A stretch of DNA of 64,000 nucleotides from NCBI GenBank assembly GCA_950097015.1, contig CATNEN010000033.1, positions 1,240,001 through 1,304,000 of the forward strand. The letters are read 5' to 3'. The notes beneath the pieces were generated by a model. The model was not told the DNA's origin, searched no databases, and saw only the letters and a list, made by a program, of their open reading frames with translations. The translations under genes were made by a program, and so were the position numbers. Shown piece after piece: positions 40,101 through 48,026 of the stretch. Every line of letters begins with the position of its first letter. Positions within the stretch are counted from its first letter, which is position 1. The DNA comes from Macrostomum hystrix. Taxonomy: Eukaryota; Animalia; Platyhelminthes.

Positions 40101-40870
40101 ACGCTGTTACTTTCGTCAGCCACTTGTCAAAGGCCTCAGTAATTTAACTGGCAGGGGCCGGTTCGTCCCCCCCTCCCGGGCAGGCAGTCTTCACCTGTTG
40201 TTCGGTGTCAAATCTGCAACCTGCGATGCTGGATTTGACTTTTGAGAGCAGCAAAAAGTCCGCCGGAGCCAAATCAGGCGAGTAGGGCATTCACAACCTG
40301 AATGCATGTCCTGACTAATTGGTCCTCGCTGACACATGCGGGCGTGCATTTTCCTGATGCAGGAACCTGCGGACTAATAATAGCCGGCAATCTGCACAAC
40401 TCCACAACTAGCCTGCATATGAAAAGTACCCTCGATTCTTACATAATGCATGTACAACTCATTGAATATTCTGTCAAGTAGTCTTACAGCATAAACAAAA
40501 GAGTGTAGAAGCGAGATTTGTGTCTCGGAGCGCCTGACACAAAACTATCCCTGGATAAATGTACGTTATGTAGTTTATGTACTTATGTGACCGTAATAAT
40601 TAAATGTATTATACTTGTAATGTAACTGTTAATTTAAGTCCTTTTATAAATGTAACTCCACTAATTCTTTATAAAAAAGTGTTTTCTGCTTTTGTGTAAT
40701 TTTGCCCGAAATTTTTTTTTTTAACTGGATACAAACCCATTCACAACGGGTCCAAAAACTTATAGTAACAGAATTATAGCTTACAATTCAGTACCGAACA
40801 GAAGTAAAAAACTACGGCTTTTAAGTAAACAAAAGAGCGCTGTCAGAGTTAGTTAAAATAAGGCGCAGCG

Positions 40871-42160
40871 TCAGTAAATCTCAGTATCCTCACGTCTGCG
40901 ATCGCGGCGAATGCGCCAGTGCTTGTGATCGCTGGAGCCGTCCATGGCCAGCACCATGCTGCCATCGATCAGATCCATTGTCTGCGTGAGCAGGTCACCC
41001 TCAACTTGAGTCAGCAGCTCACTCTCGGCGTTAAACTCCTGTTCGTCTGTCGACGAGTAGCCAACGTACTTCTAAAAATTCAAGAAACTGCCTTATTGGA
41101 CTGACTATCGGTGAAAAAAACAAGCGAAAAATTGAGACGCCGATCAGTAACTACAAAAATTCTAATTTAAATAACAAATCAATCAATCACCTTAAACTTG
41201 CGCCACAGCCGACGAGACATGGCCGAGTCCTCAGTGGCGATAGTCGAGTTGGCGTTGCAGAAGTCAGGCACGGTGTACAGGTCCCTGTCCTTGTTGCCCA
41301 GAGTCACATTGTAGTACTGGTAGTTGCCCATCAGGCTGCGGAAGCGCCTCTTCACCCGGTAGGCGCCCTTCACAGGCACACAGGAGCCGCTGGTGACCAC
41401 GGAGAACACCTCTGTGGTCAGAGCGCGACTGGCGTTGCGGTAGCCGTAGGCAGTCACTGCCAGGCTGTTGGAGCCGGCGCCGTACGAGTAGGGGTCGAAA
41501 CGCTTGAAGAAGTCTACGAGAATCGGCGAGGGATGAGCGAGTTCATGAGTTCCACAATTCATGATTCCGAGCTGAAATTTACCACTACACTGACCTGGAA
41601 TGCAGGGTCGGCTCATCGGCCTCTTCAATCTGAACGTCTTGCACTTGTCCTTGAAGATGAAGTAGGCCTTCTTGGCGTTGAAGTCGGCCACAGTTCGAGT
41701 CTCGTAGACCCTCTTGGTCTTCTTGCAGTAGAGCATAGATCTGACGCCGACCTTCTTGCCAGAGAAGTCCAGACCAACTTTGCTGTCAGACTGCGGGTAA
41801 AGCAAGAATGAACAGAATTTGAGGATTGCGTTTGAATCGGCATACCTTATCTGCTTGAGCACCAAATCTTGGGCATCAAGCAGTCTGCAGTCCGGTCGCT
41901 TTGACCAGCCTACGAGCGTACAACTTAGAATGCACAAAGCGAGCCACTCGAGACCGCAGGCTGCAACTCACAGCTCGCACTTTGGGCTTCAGGAAGCGCT
42001 TGCTGATGTGGAAGGCGCCCACGCGACCCTCCCACTGGGTCGGCAGGCAGCAGCCCTGGCCCAGCTCGCCCTTGTCGTCCGCGTACTCTCCCTGCCAGAA
42101 GAGGCTTTCCATGGCGCTGGCAGAGGCCAGCACGGCTAGCAGAAGCACCACGGTCTTCAT
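40871..42160 (-). CDS. EPDR: Ependymin-related protein, copy L (secreted/lysosomal), 4 exons
   Basis: Exons 42160-41981, 41790-41595, 41513-41191, 41071-40871. Signal peptide MKTVVLLLAVLASASA; ependymin motifs CCLPTQWEG, PCIP, GSCVPV, YTVPDFC; acidic/Arg-rich C-terminal exon ending ..RRDRRREDTEIY*. Family-level call; orthology to EPDR1 not established. Confidence 0.88.
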
Positions 42161-42230
42161 GTTTGCTTTCTTTGATTTCAGTATGCTTAGATGAGAAAAT
42201 AACAGAGGAGGAGGGTGAAGTGTTGTATTG

Positions 42231-42238
42231 CTTTTATA
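42231..42238 (-). promoter_or_regulatory. Putative TATA box of EPDR copy L
   Basis: TATAAAAG on the minus strand, about 70 bp upstream of the ATG at 42160. Confidence 0.5.
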
Positions 42239-44651
42239 GTTTCAGTTTGCTACCTTTCTGTGAAACGTTATCTTTCCAGGCAACTAGGCGCAGATCTTTG
42301 GTTGAGAAAATTGAACAGGTTACCACGAGGCTGAAGGCCTGGAGACGCGCAATCAAGCGCGTTGGTACAGACACGTAGACAGAGCGTGTTTCTGGTCCAT
42401 GCTGGTGTACAGCTAGTCACATGCATTCTGACTAATAATGCACATGGCAGTTCTGTCTTACTAAGAGAACACAAAGTCACAAAGGTCGAATTCGGTGCAG
42501 AAAATATATCTTGATGCTATTAGCATTCGCAACACTGTTGTCAACAAGATTGCGCTGGTCGCTAGGAGTCGATTAGATCGCTCGTTCGCGCGAGGCATTT
42601 TGTTACAAACAGATAGCTAATGTTATGTGAAGGTCGTCTCTGTTAACCTGGCTCTGCCGACTGTTTCAAAATTAAGAGCTGCATTATCGGGCCAAATAAA
42701 TCTAATTTTATTTAGTCGATGACAGCCTGCAATCGCTCATGTGCAAGCAGATTTTTACAGCCATATGAAGCAGCAAGACTGATACTAAGCAAGAAGCTCC
42801 AGCGACTGTGTGCATTTCGGCGAATTTTTCGAATAATTAGTTCATACTATCTAATCGGCCTATAACAAAAACATACTGTTGCAGTTTAGCTCAGCTTTAA
42901 ATAAAAAACAAACTGAAAGGCTCGCTAAAAATCGTTACTGTTTTTAGCCGTCACTGGCATGAGCAGGGGACTTGGACCGGTCCCTGCGCACCAGAGAGCA
43001 TGTGTCGCTGAATCTTGGAAAGGGACAGCTCTGGCGGTCGATGTTGGGCTGCTTTGCTTGGGCCAAGCAGGGCCAGGTACTTTTTGTACACAGGTGGTTG
43101 CAGAACTTTGAAAAAACGTTTCAACGGCTGCAGCGGCTGATGTTGGTCTTTACTCTTCAGGCAGCTGGATGCCACGGGCATGAAGGTGGAGTGGAGATCG
43201 ATGAGGCGGGAAGTGGAGGAGGAGAGACAGGAGCGATGGTATCGGTGAGAAGCCTGATTGGCTAGCCACGGATGACAATGGTGCCTTGGCGTGCAGATGG
43301 AGAGCTTGAGCCACAGATCAAAGGTGAACGTGTGGCGCAGGTTGTAACAGGGACCCAGCCAGATGGAATCCTGGTGTCGCCTCGAATACGGGATTTGCTT
43401 GTGGTGAATAGGGTGTCTGTGCGTCAGCTCGAGGATATGTTCGAATGAAATTTGTTATTAGTCAACGAATCATTACAAAATTAGAGGCCTTCCATAAATT
43501 GGGAATCCCTGACTAAAAAAGTGATATCATAGACTATAATACTTGTAGTCAGCCAAGCTTCAGAAAATGATTTCTTAAAAAACGAGTAGCAAAAAAAGGA
43601 GTAACAAATGTAGGTTTCGCAAACTGTTTCGCAACCAGCATACCGGCATAGGTCGCGAGAGAATTTTGCGTGTACCTGGAATAAATACATACACTCATCA
43701 GATACATAGTCAGGCTTCTCAAGTATCCACATCGAACAGATTTTTGGTAGTTACTTAACAGTTTATTTTTAATCTGCACATGTTGGTCAGAAACAACTCA
43801 TGACCAGTCAATAGTGAAAAAATAATGCATGCACAACTTCGCAAAGCCTTTGCTTTTGATTTTGATTTTTTTATCTAGTTTAAAAAAGCGCGTAAAATGA
43901 AAAACAAAAACAGAGTTTGAGACAAAGACTCGCCAACACCAGGCTTTGTCGCCCGGCGGGAATTTCCTACTGGACTATTTTCAGTGTCGCGTAAGCGTCA
44001 GACACAAAAACTAAATTGAACAATTAAACTAAAGGTTAAGAACAAGACAAAACGTCTTTTTGAGGCAATTTAAACTACACAGAGTGCCGATATGAAGTGA
44101 TTTTGATGTCTTAAATTATCATTATTGTTCACAACAGCTGATGAATCGGTATTCCTGGTAAGCTGGTAGATTGGTACAAGTGTTCAAGGCTGACCCAGGA
44201 CAGCGGGGCTGTTGTGTTCCGAGATGGACTAGCTGGCTTTGCCTCGCGTTCTTGACGAGCAGAAAGACTCAGCACTCCAGTCCTTCTACATTTTAATTCA
44301 CTTATGGATGGCGGCAGCGGTGGATGGCATCGAGAGACTGATACAGCCAATCATGCGAGCAGGGCGATGAGAGACTACTCAAAACAGGATTACAGCTGCT
44401 CAAAGCAGGTTGGACACGACAAATTAAAGGTCTCTCGCTACTGCAAGTAGTGGGCATGATTCAAAACAGGATGACATCGCCAACGGGACGGCAGGACTAA
44501 TCTAATCAAGCGCTTCTGCTGAGTAGGGCACTGGGCAGCTCAGTAAGTAATTTTTTAACTCGTATCTTTGACTCGCAGAGTAAAGGGCACCCTGCAGTTT
44601 TATTGTGCTGCAGATCAGGGTGCAGATTGCTACTTTTGATCTACTGATCCG

Positions 44652-44663
44652 TGTCACGTGACA
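44652..44663. promoter_or_regulatory. Palindromic E-box matching the CLEAR consensus (TGTCACGTGACA)
   Basis: Perfect 12-bp palindrome containing GTCACGTGAC in the spacer between the divergent EPDR genes. Confidence 0.35.
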
Positions 44664-45024
44664 TGTCCATGGGTCTTCACATCGATCACGAACACTGTAA
44701 GTGCTCAGGATGGCGAGCCGGCTGTTAAGGGGTGCTCACACTCAGGTTCCCCTTCACCTAAGTCAGCGCTGTGCCAAATATCCAAGTAGCGAAGGTGACT
44801 GCTTCGACGAATTTATTATCGGAAGTATATTATTATTAAACTAAGTAATCTTTGAACATGAAAAACAATAATCCTCTAGTACAGTTTGCGAGTCCACAAA
44901 TTGTAATTTCCGTTCCAAAAAAAGAAAAAATTCGCCTTTAAAGAAAAGAAAAACGAAACTAAAATCAACCTTCGTGTCTCCTGCAAGCAACTTTGATCTA
45001 TGCACTCTGAGATAACGCAGCTTC

Positions 45025-45032
45025 TATATAAG
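45025..45032 (+). promoter_or_regulatory. Putative TATA box of EPDR copy R
   Basis: TATATAAG about 80 bp upstream of the ATG at 45113, at a spacing similar to copy L. Confidence 0.5.
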
Positions 45033-45112
45033 TCGGAGAAGAAAACTCGAAAAGTTTCTTCAAGCAAGTTAGCGAGAAAATCGCGCAGAGAACAACTAAC
45101 ACCAAAGCAAAC

Positions 45113-46498
45113 ATGAAGACTGTGGTGCTTCTGCTAGCCGTGCTGGCCTCTGCCAGCGCCATGGAAAGCCTCTTCTGGCAGGGAGAGTACGCGGACGACA
45201 AGGGCGAGCTGGGCCAGGGCTGCTGCCTGCCGACCCAGTGGGAGGGTCGCGTGGGCGCCTTCCACATCAGCAAGCGCTTCCTGAAGCCCAAAGTGCGAGC
45301 TGTGAGTTGCAGCCTGCGGTCTCGAGTGGCTCGCTTTGTGCATTCTAAGTTGTACGCTCGTAGGCTGGTCAAAGCGACCGGACTGCAGACTGCTTGATGC
45401 CCAAGATTTGGTGCTCAAGCAGATAAGGTATGCCGATTCAAACGCAATCCTCAAATTCTGTTCATTCTTGCTTTACCCGCAGTCTGACAGCAAAGTTGGT
45501 CTGGACTTCTCTGGCAAGAAGGTCGGCGTCAGATCTATGCTCTACTGCAAGAAGACCAAGAGGGTCTACGAGACTCGAACTGTGGCCGACTTCAACGCCA
45601 AGAAGGCCTACTTCATCTTCAAGGACAAGTGCAAGACGTTCAGATTGAAGAGGCCGATGAGCCGACCCTGCATTCCAGGTCAGTGTAGTGGTAAATTTCA
45701 GCTCGGAATCATGAATTGTGGAACTCATGAACTCGCTCATCCCTCGCCAATTCTCGTAGACTTCTTCAAGCGTTTCGACCCCTACTCGTACGGCGCCGGC
45801 TCCAACAGCCTGGCAGTGACTGCCTACGGCTACCGCAACGCCAGTCGCGCTCTGACCACAGAGGTGTTCTCCGTGGTCACCAGCGGCTCCTGTGTGCCTG
45901 TGAAGGGCGCCTACCGGGTGAAGAGGCGCTTCCGCAGCCTGATGGGCAACTACCAGTACTACAATGTGACTCTGGGCAACAAGGACAGGGACCTGTACAC
46001 CGTGCCTGACTTCTGCTACGCCAACTCGACTATCGCCACTGAGGACTCGGCCATGTCTCGTCGGCTGTGGCGCAAGTTCAAGGTGGATTTAATAGCACTG
46101 AAGCAATTTATTATTTTTGTCCATTTTGGTTTTTTGGTTTTTTATTAGGACCGAAAATAAAGTGATAGCATGAAGAGCAAAGGCACAAAGATCCTGCGCT
46201 TTTTCTCGTAGATGAAAGGTAACAAACGAAATGGGAATTGCGATTCCAGAAATACATCAGCTCCACCGACAGTAAGGAGTTCAACGCAGACAGCGAGCTG
46301 ATGACTCAGGTTGAAGGCGATCTATTGACCCAGACGATGGATCTTATCGACGGTAGCATGGAGCTGGCCATGGGCGGTGAAAAAGGTCACGAGCACTGGC
46401 GCAGCGGTCGACGTGAAGGTCGTCGCAGGGGACGTCACGGCAGGCGGCGCCACGGTTCGGAGGAGGACGAAGCAGGCCTAATGGAGTCGAGCTTATGA
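45113..46498 (+). CDS. EPDR: Ependymin-related protein, copy R, 4 exons
   Basis: Exons 45113-45292, 45483-45678, 45760-46082, 46250-46498. Same motifs as copy L; last exon ends ..RRREGRRRGRHGRRRHGSEEDEAGLMESSL*. Confidence 0.88.
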
Positions 46499-46899: not shown

Positions 46900-48026
46900 T
46901 CATGCGGCAGTCGTTAGCTGCATGTCGCTGAAAGACCTCAACCTCAGGCGAACAGATTCAGCAGGATCGACAATGCCTTCTGTATGCAATTCGGCGACGA
47001 ATGTCTCGCAGTTGCCGGGCCACTCCAGAAAATCCGCGAACTGTCGACTGGCAAGAAACTCCGCCTCGTGGCGACGATCTGGCGAGCAGGCGAACTCATC
47101 CACGGGGTCGCCACCGCAGCCGGGCTCGCTGGGCAGGCAGGGCTCGCCGGGATGGACCATCCACTCGCACCAGAGCTCGGTTGGCTTTTGATGGCGCTGC
47201 TGCAAAGCCAGGAGTTCACAGATTGTGACTGAGTTATCAATATCGGCGATAGAACACTGTCGGAACTATTTCCAATAGAGTCAGTTGCCAGCAACGCACC
47301 CAGTCGAGCAATGCCGGCGCCAGCTGTCTGGCAAGCTGTGCGGCCACCCTGTCCAACCGCATCTCGGCTCCCATGCTGGACAGGCCGAGAAAGACGCCAG
47401 GCCATGCAAGCTCAGCCAGCCGGAAATCCTGCTCGGCCACCGACAGCGCTTCCGTAGACACCGCTGTCAGAAATCGCCGCCTGTCGAACTCGGCACCGTT
47501 GAGTTCTTCGTCGAAATCGACTGACCAGGGCAGGCGGCGCTCGGCGGGCACTCGAACGCGCCTGACACCGGCCGCGACGGTCGCTTCGGCGAAAGCGGAC
47601 GCGGCAAGGCCGGGCAGCGAGTGTGCGTGCTGGTGCCCATCAACGTGGCTGGCTGGCCGGCCGTTGAAGATCTCGACGAAGCGGGCAAACTGGGCGCCAG
47701 CCTCGGCCACAATGTCGGAGCGAATCACCCTGCCGGCTAAGACGGCGTCGCGAAATCCCATCTTTCCGAGAAATCGGCCACTGTCCGGATCCACCAGGCT
47801 GGGCACCTGATTTGGTGGGCAGAGCGGCCGGCCCTCGGTCAAATTTAGGTGAAGCCCTGGCGGAGGTCGATTCGCAAAGTGGCGCCGAATGTCTTCGGAG
47901 CTGCAGGCCGAACCGGTGACCATGAAGGATGCGTCTGTCACGTGACCATCGGCCAGAAGCCGCAGAATAACCCCGGTCGCGCCTGGCCGAGTAGCCCAGG
48001 TCGTCAGCATTGATAATTAGGTTCAC
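46900..48026 (-). CDS. YDJC: YdjC/ChbG-family carbohydrate deacetylase; 2 exons; +1 frameshift near 47970; no ATG at the start
   Basis: Exon 48026-47300 starts right after the acceptor ctctccAG: VNLIINADDLGYSARRDRG, then (after the shift) ILRLLADGHVTDASFMV..GLHLNLTEG..HVDGHQHAH. Donor gtgcgt at 47299. Exon 47199-46900 reads EWMVHPG..GCGGDPVDEFACSPDRRHE. These match the YdjC catalytic Asp/His motifs. Confidence 0.9.

What the first reader, a model, noticed from the sequence alone, without database searches (positions are those of the whole stretch)
40871..46498. Head-to-head EPDR paralogues with a near-identical ATG-to-donor tract but diverged last exons (probable gene conversion across an inverted repeat)
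Seen: 41191-42169 (-) and 45104-46082 (+) align without indels (coordinates sum to 87273). I found only three substitutions (N/Y in PDFC[N/Y]AN, TTT/TTC, CCG/CCA), and introns 1 and 2 are included in the identity. Identity begins about 9 nt before the ATG and ends at the exon-3 donor. Intron 3, the upstream regions and exon 4 are clearly diverged: exon 4 is still alignable (EFNA[ED]SEL[LM]TQVEGDLLTQTMDLIDGSM) but has many synonymous changes and different tails. Inference: an older inverted duplication whose ependymin domains were recently homogenised while promoters and C-terminal modules stayed distinct, giving one ligand-binding domain under two promoters with two tails.
Basis: partly seen in the sequence, partly recalled or inferred. 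Interest (0 to 1): 0.75.

Follow-up and report, generated by a model that had tools for sequence, protein, structure and literature searches.

The report
Gene-converted head-to-head flatworm ependymin genes
Two neighbouring, oppositely oriented copies of a secreted ependymin-type gene in a Macrostomum flatworm keep overwriting each other's first three exons and two introns while their last exons and promoters evolve apart; this is a clean but ordinary case of gene conversion between duplicates.

Summary
Arms 41188-42169 (-) and 45104-46085 (+) are a gap-free 982-nt inverted repeat with four differences, not three. It runs from 9 nt before each ATG to 3 nt past the exon-3 donor. Upstream DNA, intron 3 and 3' flanks align no better than shuffled sequence. 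Exon 4 is 77% identical, with core dS about 1.4 and dN/dS about 0.09. Exons 1-3 have dS about 0.012, and introns 1-2 differ at 1 of 262 sites.

The genes are four-exon ependymin-related genes of a Macrostomum flatworm, present only as this pair in the 220-Mb assembly. Homologous proteins confirm the splice junctions.

M. lignano has several neighbouring pairs of the same family. Their first ~308 residues group by locus and their C-terminal ends group by type. The 'RRDRRREDTEI' end is shared with the left copy here. So the duplication is old, and the ependymin domain is homogenised repeatedly and independently in each lineage.

This is concerted evolution by interlocus gene conversion, as known from Drosophila Amy and Hsp70 and C. 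elegans col-12/col-13. The case is a new member of a known kind, of modest interest. This scan's notes list other converted inverted pairs in this genome.

The parts
40871..42160 (-). Left EPDR gene (L, type-A tail). Exon 1 42160-41972, exon 2 41790-41595, exon 3 41513-41191, exon 4 41071-40871 (stop TGA 40873-40871).
   Evidence: Read from the sequence. Junctions KVRA|SDSK, RPCIP|D and RKFK|KY match the homologous proteins P0001-P0003. Pfam PF00811 matches exons 2-3.
45113..46498 (+). Right EPDR gene (R, type-B tail). Exon 1 45113-45301, exon 2 45483-45678, exon 3 45760-46082, exon 4 46250-46498 (stop TGA 46496-46498).
   Evidence: Read from the sequence. Same junction support as L. PF00811 scores 42.6 bits against a cut-off of 32.3 over 45483-46082.
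41188..42169 (-). Left arm of the converted tract, 982 nt: 9 nt of 5' leader, exons 1-3, introns 1-2 and 3 nt of intron 3.
   Evidence: 978/982 identical to the right arm, with no indels.
45104..46085 (+). Right arm of the converted tract, 982 nt.
   Evidence: Mismatches at 45121, 45749, 46017 and 46079.
42170..45103 (.). 2934-nt single-copy spacer holding both diverged upstream regions. TATA-like boxes: TATAAAAG at 42238-42231 (-), 78 nt before the L ATG; TATATAAG at 45025-45032 (+), 88 nt before the R ATG.
   Evidence: Unique in the genome except for a ~78-nt element at 44212-44289. The two upstream regions are no more alike than shuffles. The TATA boxes were read; their function is inferred.
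41072..41190 (-). L intron 3, 119 nt, GC 0.31. Outside the tract and not alignable with R intron 3.
46083..46249 (+). R intron 3, 167 nt, GC 0.35. Outside the tract.
40871..41071 (-). L exon 4: diverged tail ending ...HWRIRRDRRREDTEIY (type A).
   Evidence: 77% nt identity to R exon 4; core dS 1.36, dN 0.127. The end motif is shared with M. lignano P0008 and resembles P0002.
46250..46498 (+). R exon 4: diverged tail ending ...GRHGRRRHGSEEDEAGLMESSL (type B).
   Evidence: The end resembles M. lignano P0005/P0007 (...GHGRRHRDSERYDEVEA).

Best explanation
These are two adjacent, head-to-head paralogues of a secreted ependymin-related (EPDR) protein in a Macrostomum flatworm. They come from an old inverted duplication that predates the split from M. 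lignano. Since then, repeated non-reciprocal repair of one copy from the other has kept a 982-nt tract nearly identical. This is interlocus gene conversion between the inverted arms, presumably double-strand-break repair without crossover. The tract covers the ATG region, exons 1-3 and introns 1-2.

The tract stops where usable homology stops: in the unconstrained upstream DNA, and in intron 3, which differs in length (119 vs 167 nt). Exon 4 therefore escaped and diverged, yet stayed under purifying selection in both copies.

The result is one homogenised signal peptide plus EPDR domain, joined to two different C-terminal tails and driven from two different upstream regions.

Shown here: the anatomy, the divergence contrast, and the cross-species mosaic. 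Inferred: the repair mechanism, what sets the tract borders, and the function of the promoters and tails.
For: 1. The arms are 978/982 identical with abrupt edges, and the flanks score no better than shuffles.
2. dS is about 0.012 in exons 1-3 (2 of 163 synonymous sites) and introns 1+2 differ at 1 of 262 sites. The exon-4 core has dS about 1.36, dN 0.127 and dN/dS about 0.09.
3. Within this species L and R are 234/235 identical over the complete codons of exons 1-3, but each is only about 82% identical (191/234) to M. lignano.
4. M. lignano proteins with consecutive accessions and equal contig lengths (inferred neighbours: PAA46890/1, PAA56017/8, PAA60135/6, PAA62280/1) fall in one 90% cluster. 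Over columns 1-308 the variants L71I, Y131F and A256T are shared by neighbours whatever their tail type. Columns 309 to the end group by tail type instead.
5. The type-A end RRDRRREDTEI is identical in L and in M. lignano P0008, and it is similar in a third species, P0002. The two tail types are therefore older than the species.
6. Three of the four mismatches lie within 68 nt of a tract edge (P about 0.01-0.02), as expected if conversion is less frequent near the borders.
7. GC is higher inside the tract. Introns are 0.51 and 0.46 inside against 0.35 and 0.31 for intron 3, and GC3 is 0.79-0.86 against 0.66-0.70. This fits GC-biased conversion.
8. Only two copies exist in the genome, so there is no third donor.
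Against: No reads or population data were available. Neither the assembly of the two arms nor polymorphism shared between the paralogues could be checked.

The orientation of the pairs, their intron identity and between-species dS are therefore unknown. Adjacency in M. lignano is inferred from accession order and contig lengths.

Type-B tail orthology rests on a short, low-complexity match. The edge clustering and the GC contrast come from very small samples. That the tract edges coincide exactly with the start of the coding region and the exon-3 donor is explained only by argument (homology eroding down to constrained sequence), not by a test.
Confidence: 0.88

Rival explanations
1. A single recent conversion or patch-replacement event copied about 1 kb from one old paralogue into the other. 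There is no continuing process.
For: Only four differences separate the arms. One recent event explains the present state of this genome as well as many events would.
Against: If the copies had been about 77% identical beforehand, the end-points of one event should lie inside the exons and leave old divergence at the outer parts of exons 1 and 3. Instead identity runs to the very edges. M. lignano shows the same homogenisation independently, with locus-specific variants shared by neighbours. That points to a recurrent process in the genus.
Confidence: 0.07
2. A recent partial duplication copied only the 982-nt segment in inverted orientation. The exon-4 similarity would then be unrelated to the age of the pair.
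For: Duplications limited to an ORF with unrelated flanks are a recognised alternative reading of such patterns (review PMC3966223).
Against: Both copies end in homologous exon 4 sequences (score 77 against 12.8 +/- 3.4 for shuffles) with saturated dS. A whole-gene duplicate was therefore already present long before. M. lignano has the same two-tail pair. A copy landing exactly upstream of an old exon 4 is a conversion in all but name.
Confidence: 0.02
3. Assembly or polishing artefact: the two arms were made alike by consensus collapse or by misplaced reads.
For: No reads were available to check. Near-identical 1-kb repeats are the places where polishing can err.
Against: Polishing cannot turn unalignable introns and roughly 77%-identical exons into 99.6% identity with base-sharp edges. 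The arms keep four differences and sit in unique, different flanks. An independent M. lignano assembly gives the same pattern at three or four loci.
Confidence: 0.02
4. Purifying selection alone keeps exons 1-3 alike, with no conversion.
For: The EPDR domain is conserved across Macrostomum at 82% amino-acid identity.
Against: Synonymous sites (2 of 163 differ) and 262 nt of intron (1 differs) are also nearly identical, whereas the constrained exon-4 core has dS about 1.36.
Confidence: 0.01

Closest known systems
Drosophila Amy-p/Amy-d and Hsp70Aa/Hsp70Ab palindromic gene pairs (ectopic gene conversion; review PMC3924832)
   Same: Tightly linked paralogues in mirror-image orientation. Paralogues within a species are more alike than orthologues between species. 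For Amy, concerted evolution is confined to the coding region while the flanks evolve independently.
   Different: Here the tract covers only the 5' three-quarters of the gene, introns included. It stops at an exon-intron border, leaving a diverged but still constrained last exon, so the two products differ in their tails. The gene family (EPDR) and phylum (Platyhelminthes) also differ.
C. elegans col-12/col-13, hsp16 inverted modules and fog-2/ftr-1 (review PMC3966223)
   Same: col-12/col-13 have 99.5% identity in the ORF including an intron, diverged flanks, and paralogues that group within each species. The hsp16 modules form an inverted repeat with fully diverged flanks. In fog-2/ftr-1 the C-terminal part stays outside conversion.
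   Different: col-12/col-13 and fog-2/ftr-1 are direct repeats, not inverted. The distinct fog-2 C-terminus is novel recruited sequence, whereas here both last exons are homologous and old.
Long-lived concerted evolution in mammalian gene pairs (PMC2720389, listed; abstract only read)
   Same: Ongoing conversion that outlasts speciation, with stretches of homogeneity and paralogues more alike than orthologues.
   Different: A different clade and different genes. I did not read that paper beyond its abstract.
Vertebrate EPDR1 / mammalian ependymin-related protein (PDB 6jl9, 6jla, 6e7o)
   Same: The Pfam Ependymin domain is matched over the curated cut-off. A family profile hits EPDR1 chains at E about 2e-4. 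There is an N-terminal hydrophobic leader and several invariant cysteines.
   Different: The Macrostomum proteins carry an extra 65-90-residue C-terminal extension: an acidic stretch (DLLTQTMDLIDGSM), then a His/Arg-rich segment and a short acidic end. It has no Pfam match. Similarity to EPDR1 is remote.

Membership tests
Ependymin / EPDR (Pfam PF00811) | Match to the Pfam Ependymin profile above the curated gathering score | tested here: met
   Window 45483-46082 (exon 2, in-frame intron 2, exon 3) scores 42.6 bits against a cut-off of 32.3. Exon 3 alone scores 31.6 bits. The genome scan marks both copies as over the cut-off. The homologues P0001-P0003 carry precomputed PF00811.
Ependymin / EPDR (Pfam PF00811) | Sequence relationship to EPDR1 proteins with solved structures | tested here: met
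   The profile of A1 hits 6jla, 6jl9, 6e7o and 6jld at E 2.4e-4 to 4.3e-4 over profile positions about 111-217. The match is weak but specific: no other PDB family appeared.
Ependymin / EPDR (Pfam PF00811) | LolA-like beta-sheet fold with a hydrophobic pocket | tested here: inconclusive
   The AlphaFold2 model of the M. lignano orthologue from a 6-sequence alignment has mean pLDDT 31.4. It is unusable and no fold search was run.
Ependymin / EPDR (Pfam PF00811) | Secreted glycoprotein: signal peptide and N-glycosylation sequons | not tested
   Seen in the sequence only: MKTVVLLLAVLASASA at the N-terminus, and NAS, NVT and NST sequons in exon 3. No signal-peptide predictor was available.
Concerted evolution by interlocus gene conversion between adjacent inverted paralogues | Silent sites and introns nearly identical in one part of the pair and saturated or unalignable in another part | tested here: met
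   dS 0.012 and 1/262 intron differences, against dS 1.36 in the exon-4 core and an unalignable intron 3.
Concerted evolution by interlocus gene conversion between adjacent inverted paralogues | Paralogues within a species more alike than orthologues between species, although the duplication predates the species | tested here: met
   L and R are 234/235 identical over the complete codons of exons 1-3, against about 82% to M. lignano. The type-A end RRDRRREDTEI is shared by L and P0008, and the type-B ends are similar. M. lignano neighbours group by locus in columns 1-308 and by type in columns 309 to the end. This was tested at protein level only, and type-B orthology is moderate.
Concerted evolution by interlocus gene conversion between adjacent inverted paralogues | Polymorphisms shared between the paralogues within a population | not testable with these tools
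   No population or read data were available. The nearest substitute is the set of locus-specific variants shared by M. lignano neighbours.
Concerted evolution by interlocus gene conversion between adjacent inverted paralogues | Both copies physically present as assembled | not testable with these tools
   No reads. Indirect support: unique flanks, four differences between the arms, and the same pattern in an independent M. lignano assembly.

The most novel reading that the evidence does not exclude
The 982-nt inverted arms could also act as a recombination switch. A crossover within the arms would invert the 2.9-kb spacer that carries both upstream regions, and so exchange the two promoters between the two tail isoforms. 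If such inversions are polymorphic or recurrent in Macrostomum, each EPDR tail could be re-assigned to the other expression programme while conversion keeps the ligand-binding domain uniform. This scan's notes list several other converted inverted pairs in the same genome, so the process may be unusually active in this lineage.
Probability: 0.1. Interest if true: 0.55.

Novelty: new member of a known kind. Interest (0 to 1): 0.3.

Why it matters
This is a clear, well-bounded example of partial concerted evolution: one gene pair with a homogenised domain and two independently evolving, still constrained tails, apparently maintained across Macrostomum species.

It matters in practice for annotating and building phylogenies of Macrostomum gene families. 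Trees built from the EPDR domain would wrongly date the duplication as recent and species-specific.

It also offers a handle on conversion tract limits and possible GC-biased conversion in a flatworm model genus. It does not reveal a new mechanism.

Tried and rejected
I could not fetch M. lignano or Logan DNA, so there is no between-species dS, no intron comparison and no orientation of the M. lignano pairs.
- A second word search with a 6-sequence profile found no further relatives beyond three clusters. Tail types could not be surveyed in more species.
- The structure prediction of the M. lignano orthologue failed (pLDDT 31.4), so no fold search was made.
- The literature search found nothing on EPDR in Macrostomum or on the M. 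lignano gene ids.
- Rfam and tRNA scans of 40.0-47.5 kb were empty, so no RNA gene explains the intron identity.
- The bacterial promoter/terminator scan does not apply to a eukaryote and was ignored.
- A wider search for inverted repeats over 28-60 kb found no larger ancient palindrome around the pair.
- An RNA-mediated origin of the tract from a partly processed transcript was considered, because the edges sit near the ATG and at a splice donor. I judged it unlikely. Introns 1-2 lie inside the tract, and each copy has its own TATA box about 80 nt upstream, so the 5' edge is not a transcript end.
- The large representative-protein search was not used, because the family scans had already settled the family.
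Searches went exon by exon by reference, or used the naturally in-frame stretch of exon 2, intron 2 and exon 3.
Full report
**Organism and scope**

The window is part of contig C33 of a 220-Mb, 42-contig assembly. The best protein relatives of the genes studied are Macrostomum lignano proteins, about 82% identical over exons 1-3. It is not human.

Every search used single exons by reference, or the stretch 45483-46082 / 45336-46148. That stretch is naturally open because intron 2 is 81 nt long, in frame and stop-free.

**The observation**

The repeat finder gives one long inverted pair, 41188-42169 and 45104-46085, 982 nt with a 2934-nt spacer. It also gives a weaker pair, 40912-41053 / 46262-46403, at 77%. 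A base-by-base comparison finds four mismatches and no indels:
- 45121: ACT/ACC, Thr codon 3, synonymous.
- 45749: A/G, inside intron 2.
- 46017: TAC/AAC, Tyr in the right copy and Asn in the left.
- 46079: TTC/TTT, synonymous.

Identity begins 9 nt before the ATG (AAAGCAAAC ATG in both copies) and ends 3 nt into intron 3. Outside these edges identity drops at once to background level.

Global and local alignments of the 300-500 nt upstream, of intron 3 (167 vs 119 nt) and of the 300 nt downstream score no better than shuffled sequence. Exon 4 aligns at 150/194 = 77%, score 77 against 12.8 +/- 3.4 for shuffles. The whole assembly holds only these two copies of the tract, of exon 3 and of exon 4.

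**Gene models**

| Copy | Strand | Exon 1 | Exon 2 | Exon 3 | Exon 4 (with stop) |
|---|---|---|---|---|---|
| Right (R) | + | 45113-45301 | 45483-45678 | 45760-46082 | 46250-46498 |
| Left (L) | - | 42160-41972 | 41790-41595 | 41513-41191 | 41071-40871 |

All introns are GT-AG. The junctions are confirmed by three homologous protein clusters, one from M. lignano and two from Logan assemblies. These read ...K(V/F)RA|SDSK......PCIP|D(F/Y)F... and ...WRKF(K/R)|N(Y/F)(V/I)G....

Exons 2-3 match Pfam Ependymin (PF00811) at 42.6 bits against a cut-off of 32.3. The genome scan flags both copies as over the cut-off. A profile of the family hits EPDR1 structures 6jla, 6jl9 and 6e7o at E about 2-4e-4.

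Exon 1 encodes a hydrophobic leader (MKTVVLLLAVLASASA), and exon 3 carries NAS, NVT and NST sequons. Secretion and glycosylation are inferred from these, not tested. Exons 1 and 4 have no Pfam match.

**Divergence contrast**

Nei-Gojobori estimates were made exon by exon:

| Region | Differences | dS | dN |
|---|---|---|---|
| Exon 1 | 1 synonymous | 0.023 | 0 |
| Exon 2 | none | 0 | 0 |
| Exon 3 | 1 synonymous, 1 non-synonymous | 0.013 | 0.004 |
| Introns 1+2 | 1 of 262 nt | - | - |
| Exon-4 core (EFNA...HW, 41 codons) | - | 1.36 | 0.127 |

Exons 1-3 together have 2 synonymous differences in about 163 synonymous sites, so dS is about 0.012. The exon-4 core has dN/dS about 0.09. Silent divergence therefore differs by about 100-fold between two parts of the same gene pair, and both last exons are under purifying selection. 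Selection on the protein cannot explain identical introns and silent sites. Only non-reciprocal copying can.

**Comparative evidence**

The M. lignano cluster has ten members. Consecutive accession numbers and equal contig lengths indicate neighbouring genes on at least three contigs:
- PAA46890/46891 and PAA62281/62280, contig of 132,122 bp.
- PAA56017/56018, contig of 150,389 bp.
- PAA60135/60136, contig of 230,924 bp.

Adjacency is inferred, and orientation is unknown. Each pair joins a 325-aa protein ending ...GHGRRHRDSERYDEVEA (type B) with a 313-318-aa protein ending ...RRDRRREDTEI or ...GRREGVEI (type A).

Over alignment columns 1-308, P0005 and P0006 (one pair) are identical. P0007 and P0008 (another pair) share I71, F131 and T256 against L, Y and A in the first pair. 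From column 309 to the end the proteins group by tail type: P0005 equals P0007, and both differ from P0006 and P0008. So the first ~308 residues follow the locus and the end follows the type. This is the mosaic expected from conversion between neighbours.

The left copy here ends ...RRDRRREDTEIY. That matches P0008 at 11 of 11 residues and resembles the third species, P0002 (...RREDRRRVDSEV). The right copy's end (...GRHGRRRHGSEEDEAGLMESSL) resembles type B. The two tail types are thus older than the species.

The EPDR domain, by contrast, is 234/235 identical over the complete codons of exons 1-3 within this species and about 82% between species. That is concerted evolution in at least two lineages. 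The 3' border of the tract differs: nearly the end of exon 4 in M. lignano, and the end of exon 3 here. The exon-4 cores of L and R (70% aa identity) are still closer to each other than to M. lignano (52-59%). This suggests exon 4 left the tract in this lineage after the split from M. lignano. That last step is an inference from short sequences.

**Secondary signals**

- Three of the four arm differences lie within 68 nt of a tract edge (P about 0.01 to 0.02 by simulation). This is expected if sites near the border are included in conversion tracts less often.
- GC is higher inside the tract. Introns 1 and 2 are 0.51 and 0.46 against 0.35 and 0.31 for the two copies of intron 3. GC3 is 0.79-0.86 in exons 1-3 against 0.66-0.70 in exon 4. 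This fits GC-biased conversion.
- Both signals rest on small samples and are only suggestive.
- Homologues have Asn (P0002, P0003) or Lys (M. lignano) at the Tyr/Asn site. The Tyr of the right copy is therefore probably a new, unconverted change.

**Surroundings**

The 2934-nt spacer is single-copy except for a ~78-nt element at 44212-44289. It has no RNA-family or tRNA match. Each gene has its own TATA-like box: TATATAAG at 45025-45032, 88 nt before the R ATG, and TATAAAAG at 42238-42231, 78 nt before the L ATG (read). The upstream sequences are otherwise unalignable. No larger inverted structure surrounds the pair within 28-60 kb.

**Mechanism**

The most likely mechanism is as follows.
1. 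An old inverted tandem duplication produced the pair.
2. Breaks in one arm have since been repaired from the other arm on the same chromatid or the sister, without crossover. This repeatedly erases differences.
3. Unconstrained flanks (upstream DNA, intron 3) accumulated substitutions and indels until they could no longer support heteroduplex. The review calls such changes 'terminator mutations'. The borders therefore retreated to the first constrained sequence: the ATG context on one side and the exon-3 donor on the other.
4. Introns 1 and 2 stay identical because they are bracketed by homologous exons.
5. Selection for different tails may also remove tracts that reach exon 4.

The tract, the contrast and the cross-species mosaic are shown. 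The repair pathway, the cause of the borders and any functional difference between the tails are inferred.

**Rivals**

- A single recent event (0.07) does not fit identity reaching the very edges, nor the parallel pattern in M. lignano.
- A recent partial duplication (0.02) is contradicted by the old homologous exon 4 and by the conserved pair in M. lignano.
- An assembly or polishing artefact (0.02) cannot create sharp-edged 99.6% identity from unalignable introns. It is also contradicted by the independent M. lignano assembly, though no reads were available to check.
- Selection alone (0.01) is refuted by the silent sites and introns.

**Comparison with what is known**

This is the classic pattern described for the Drosophila Amy-p/Amy-d and Hsp70 palindromic pairs. 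There, concerted evolution is confined to coding sequence and the flanks evolve independently (PMC3924832). The same pattern is described for the C. elegans col-12/col-13, hsp16 and fog-2/ftr-1 genes, with introns included in tracts, diverged flanks and a C-terminal part kept out of conversion (PMC3966223).

Notes of this scan list further converted inverted pairs in the same genome: Osr, GCNT and another ependymin-like pair. I did not check them. I found no paper on EPDR genes in Macrostomum.

**Verdict**

This is a new member of a known kind, with interest about 0.3.

**Limits**

- The structure model failed.

Noticed in passing
window 45679-45759 (+) and 41514-41594 (-): Intron 2 of both copies is 81 nt, in frame and free of stops. 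Its retention would insert 27 residues into the EPDR domain without breaking the frame. The long ORFs 45336..46148 and 41179..41937 read straight through it.
   Followed up: partly
window 40144-40405 (-): Remnant of a mariner/Tc1-type transposase (...PYSPDLAPADFLLLSKVK...). It lies about 0.5-0.7 kb beyond the stop codon of the left EPDR copy.
   Followed up: no
window 44212-44289: A ~78-nt element in the spacer has four diverged copies (75-88%) on other contigs (C33, C7, C41, C9). It has no Rfam or tRNA match and is possibly a small dispersed repeat.
   Followed up: partly
G000 C14:332561-332686 and C14:1198470-1198541 (loci L009, L010): Weak sub-threshold Pfam Ependymin matches elsewhere in the genome. 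They are probably distant EPDR-like genes that do not belong to this pair's subfamily.
   Followed up: no
same genome, other pieces (scan notes s1-316736, s1-402571, s1-278306): Earlier notes report other inverted paralogue pairs with apparent gene conversion in this genome: Osr, GCNT and another ependymin-like pair 53 kb apart. Conversion between inverted duplicates may be common in this genome.
   Followed up: no
window 47237-48010 (-): A 257-aa ORF lies just beyond the 3' end of the right EPDR copy, on the opposite strand. An earlier scan note calls it YdjC-like and says it lacks its own ATG, possibly starting from a spliced-leader AUG.
   Followed up: no
M. lignano proteins P0001, P0012, P0013 and P0004: UniRef names some of these EPDR homologues 'Protein virilizer' and one 'PIPK domain-containing protein'. 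Nothing in their sequences or Pfam hits supports these names, so they look like annotation errors.
   Followed up: partly
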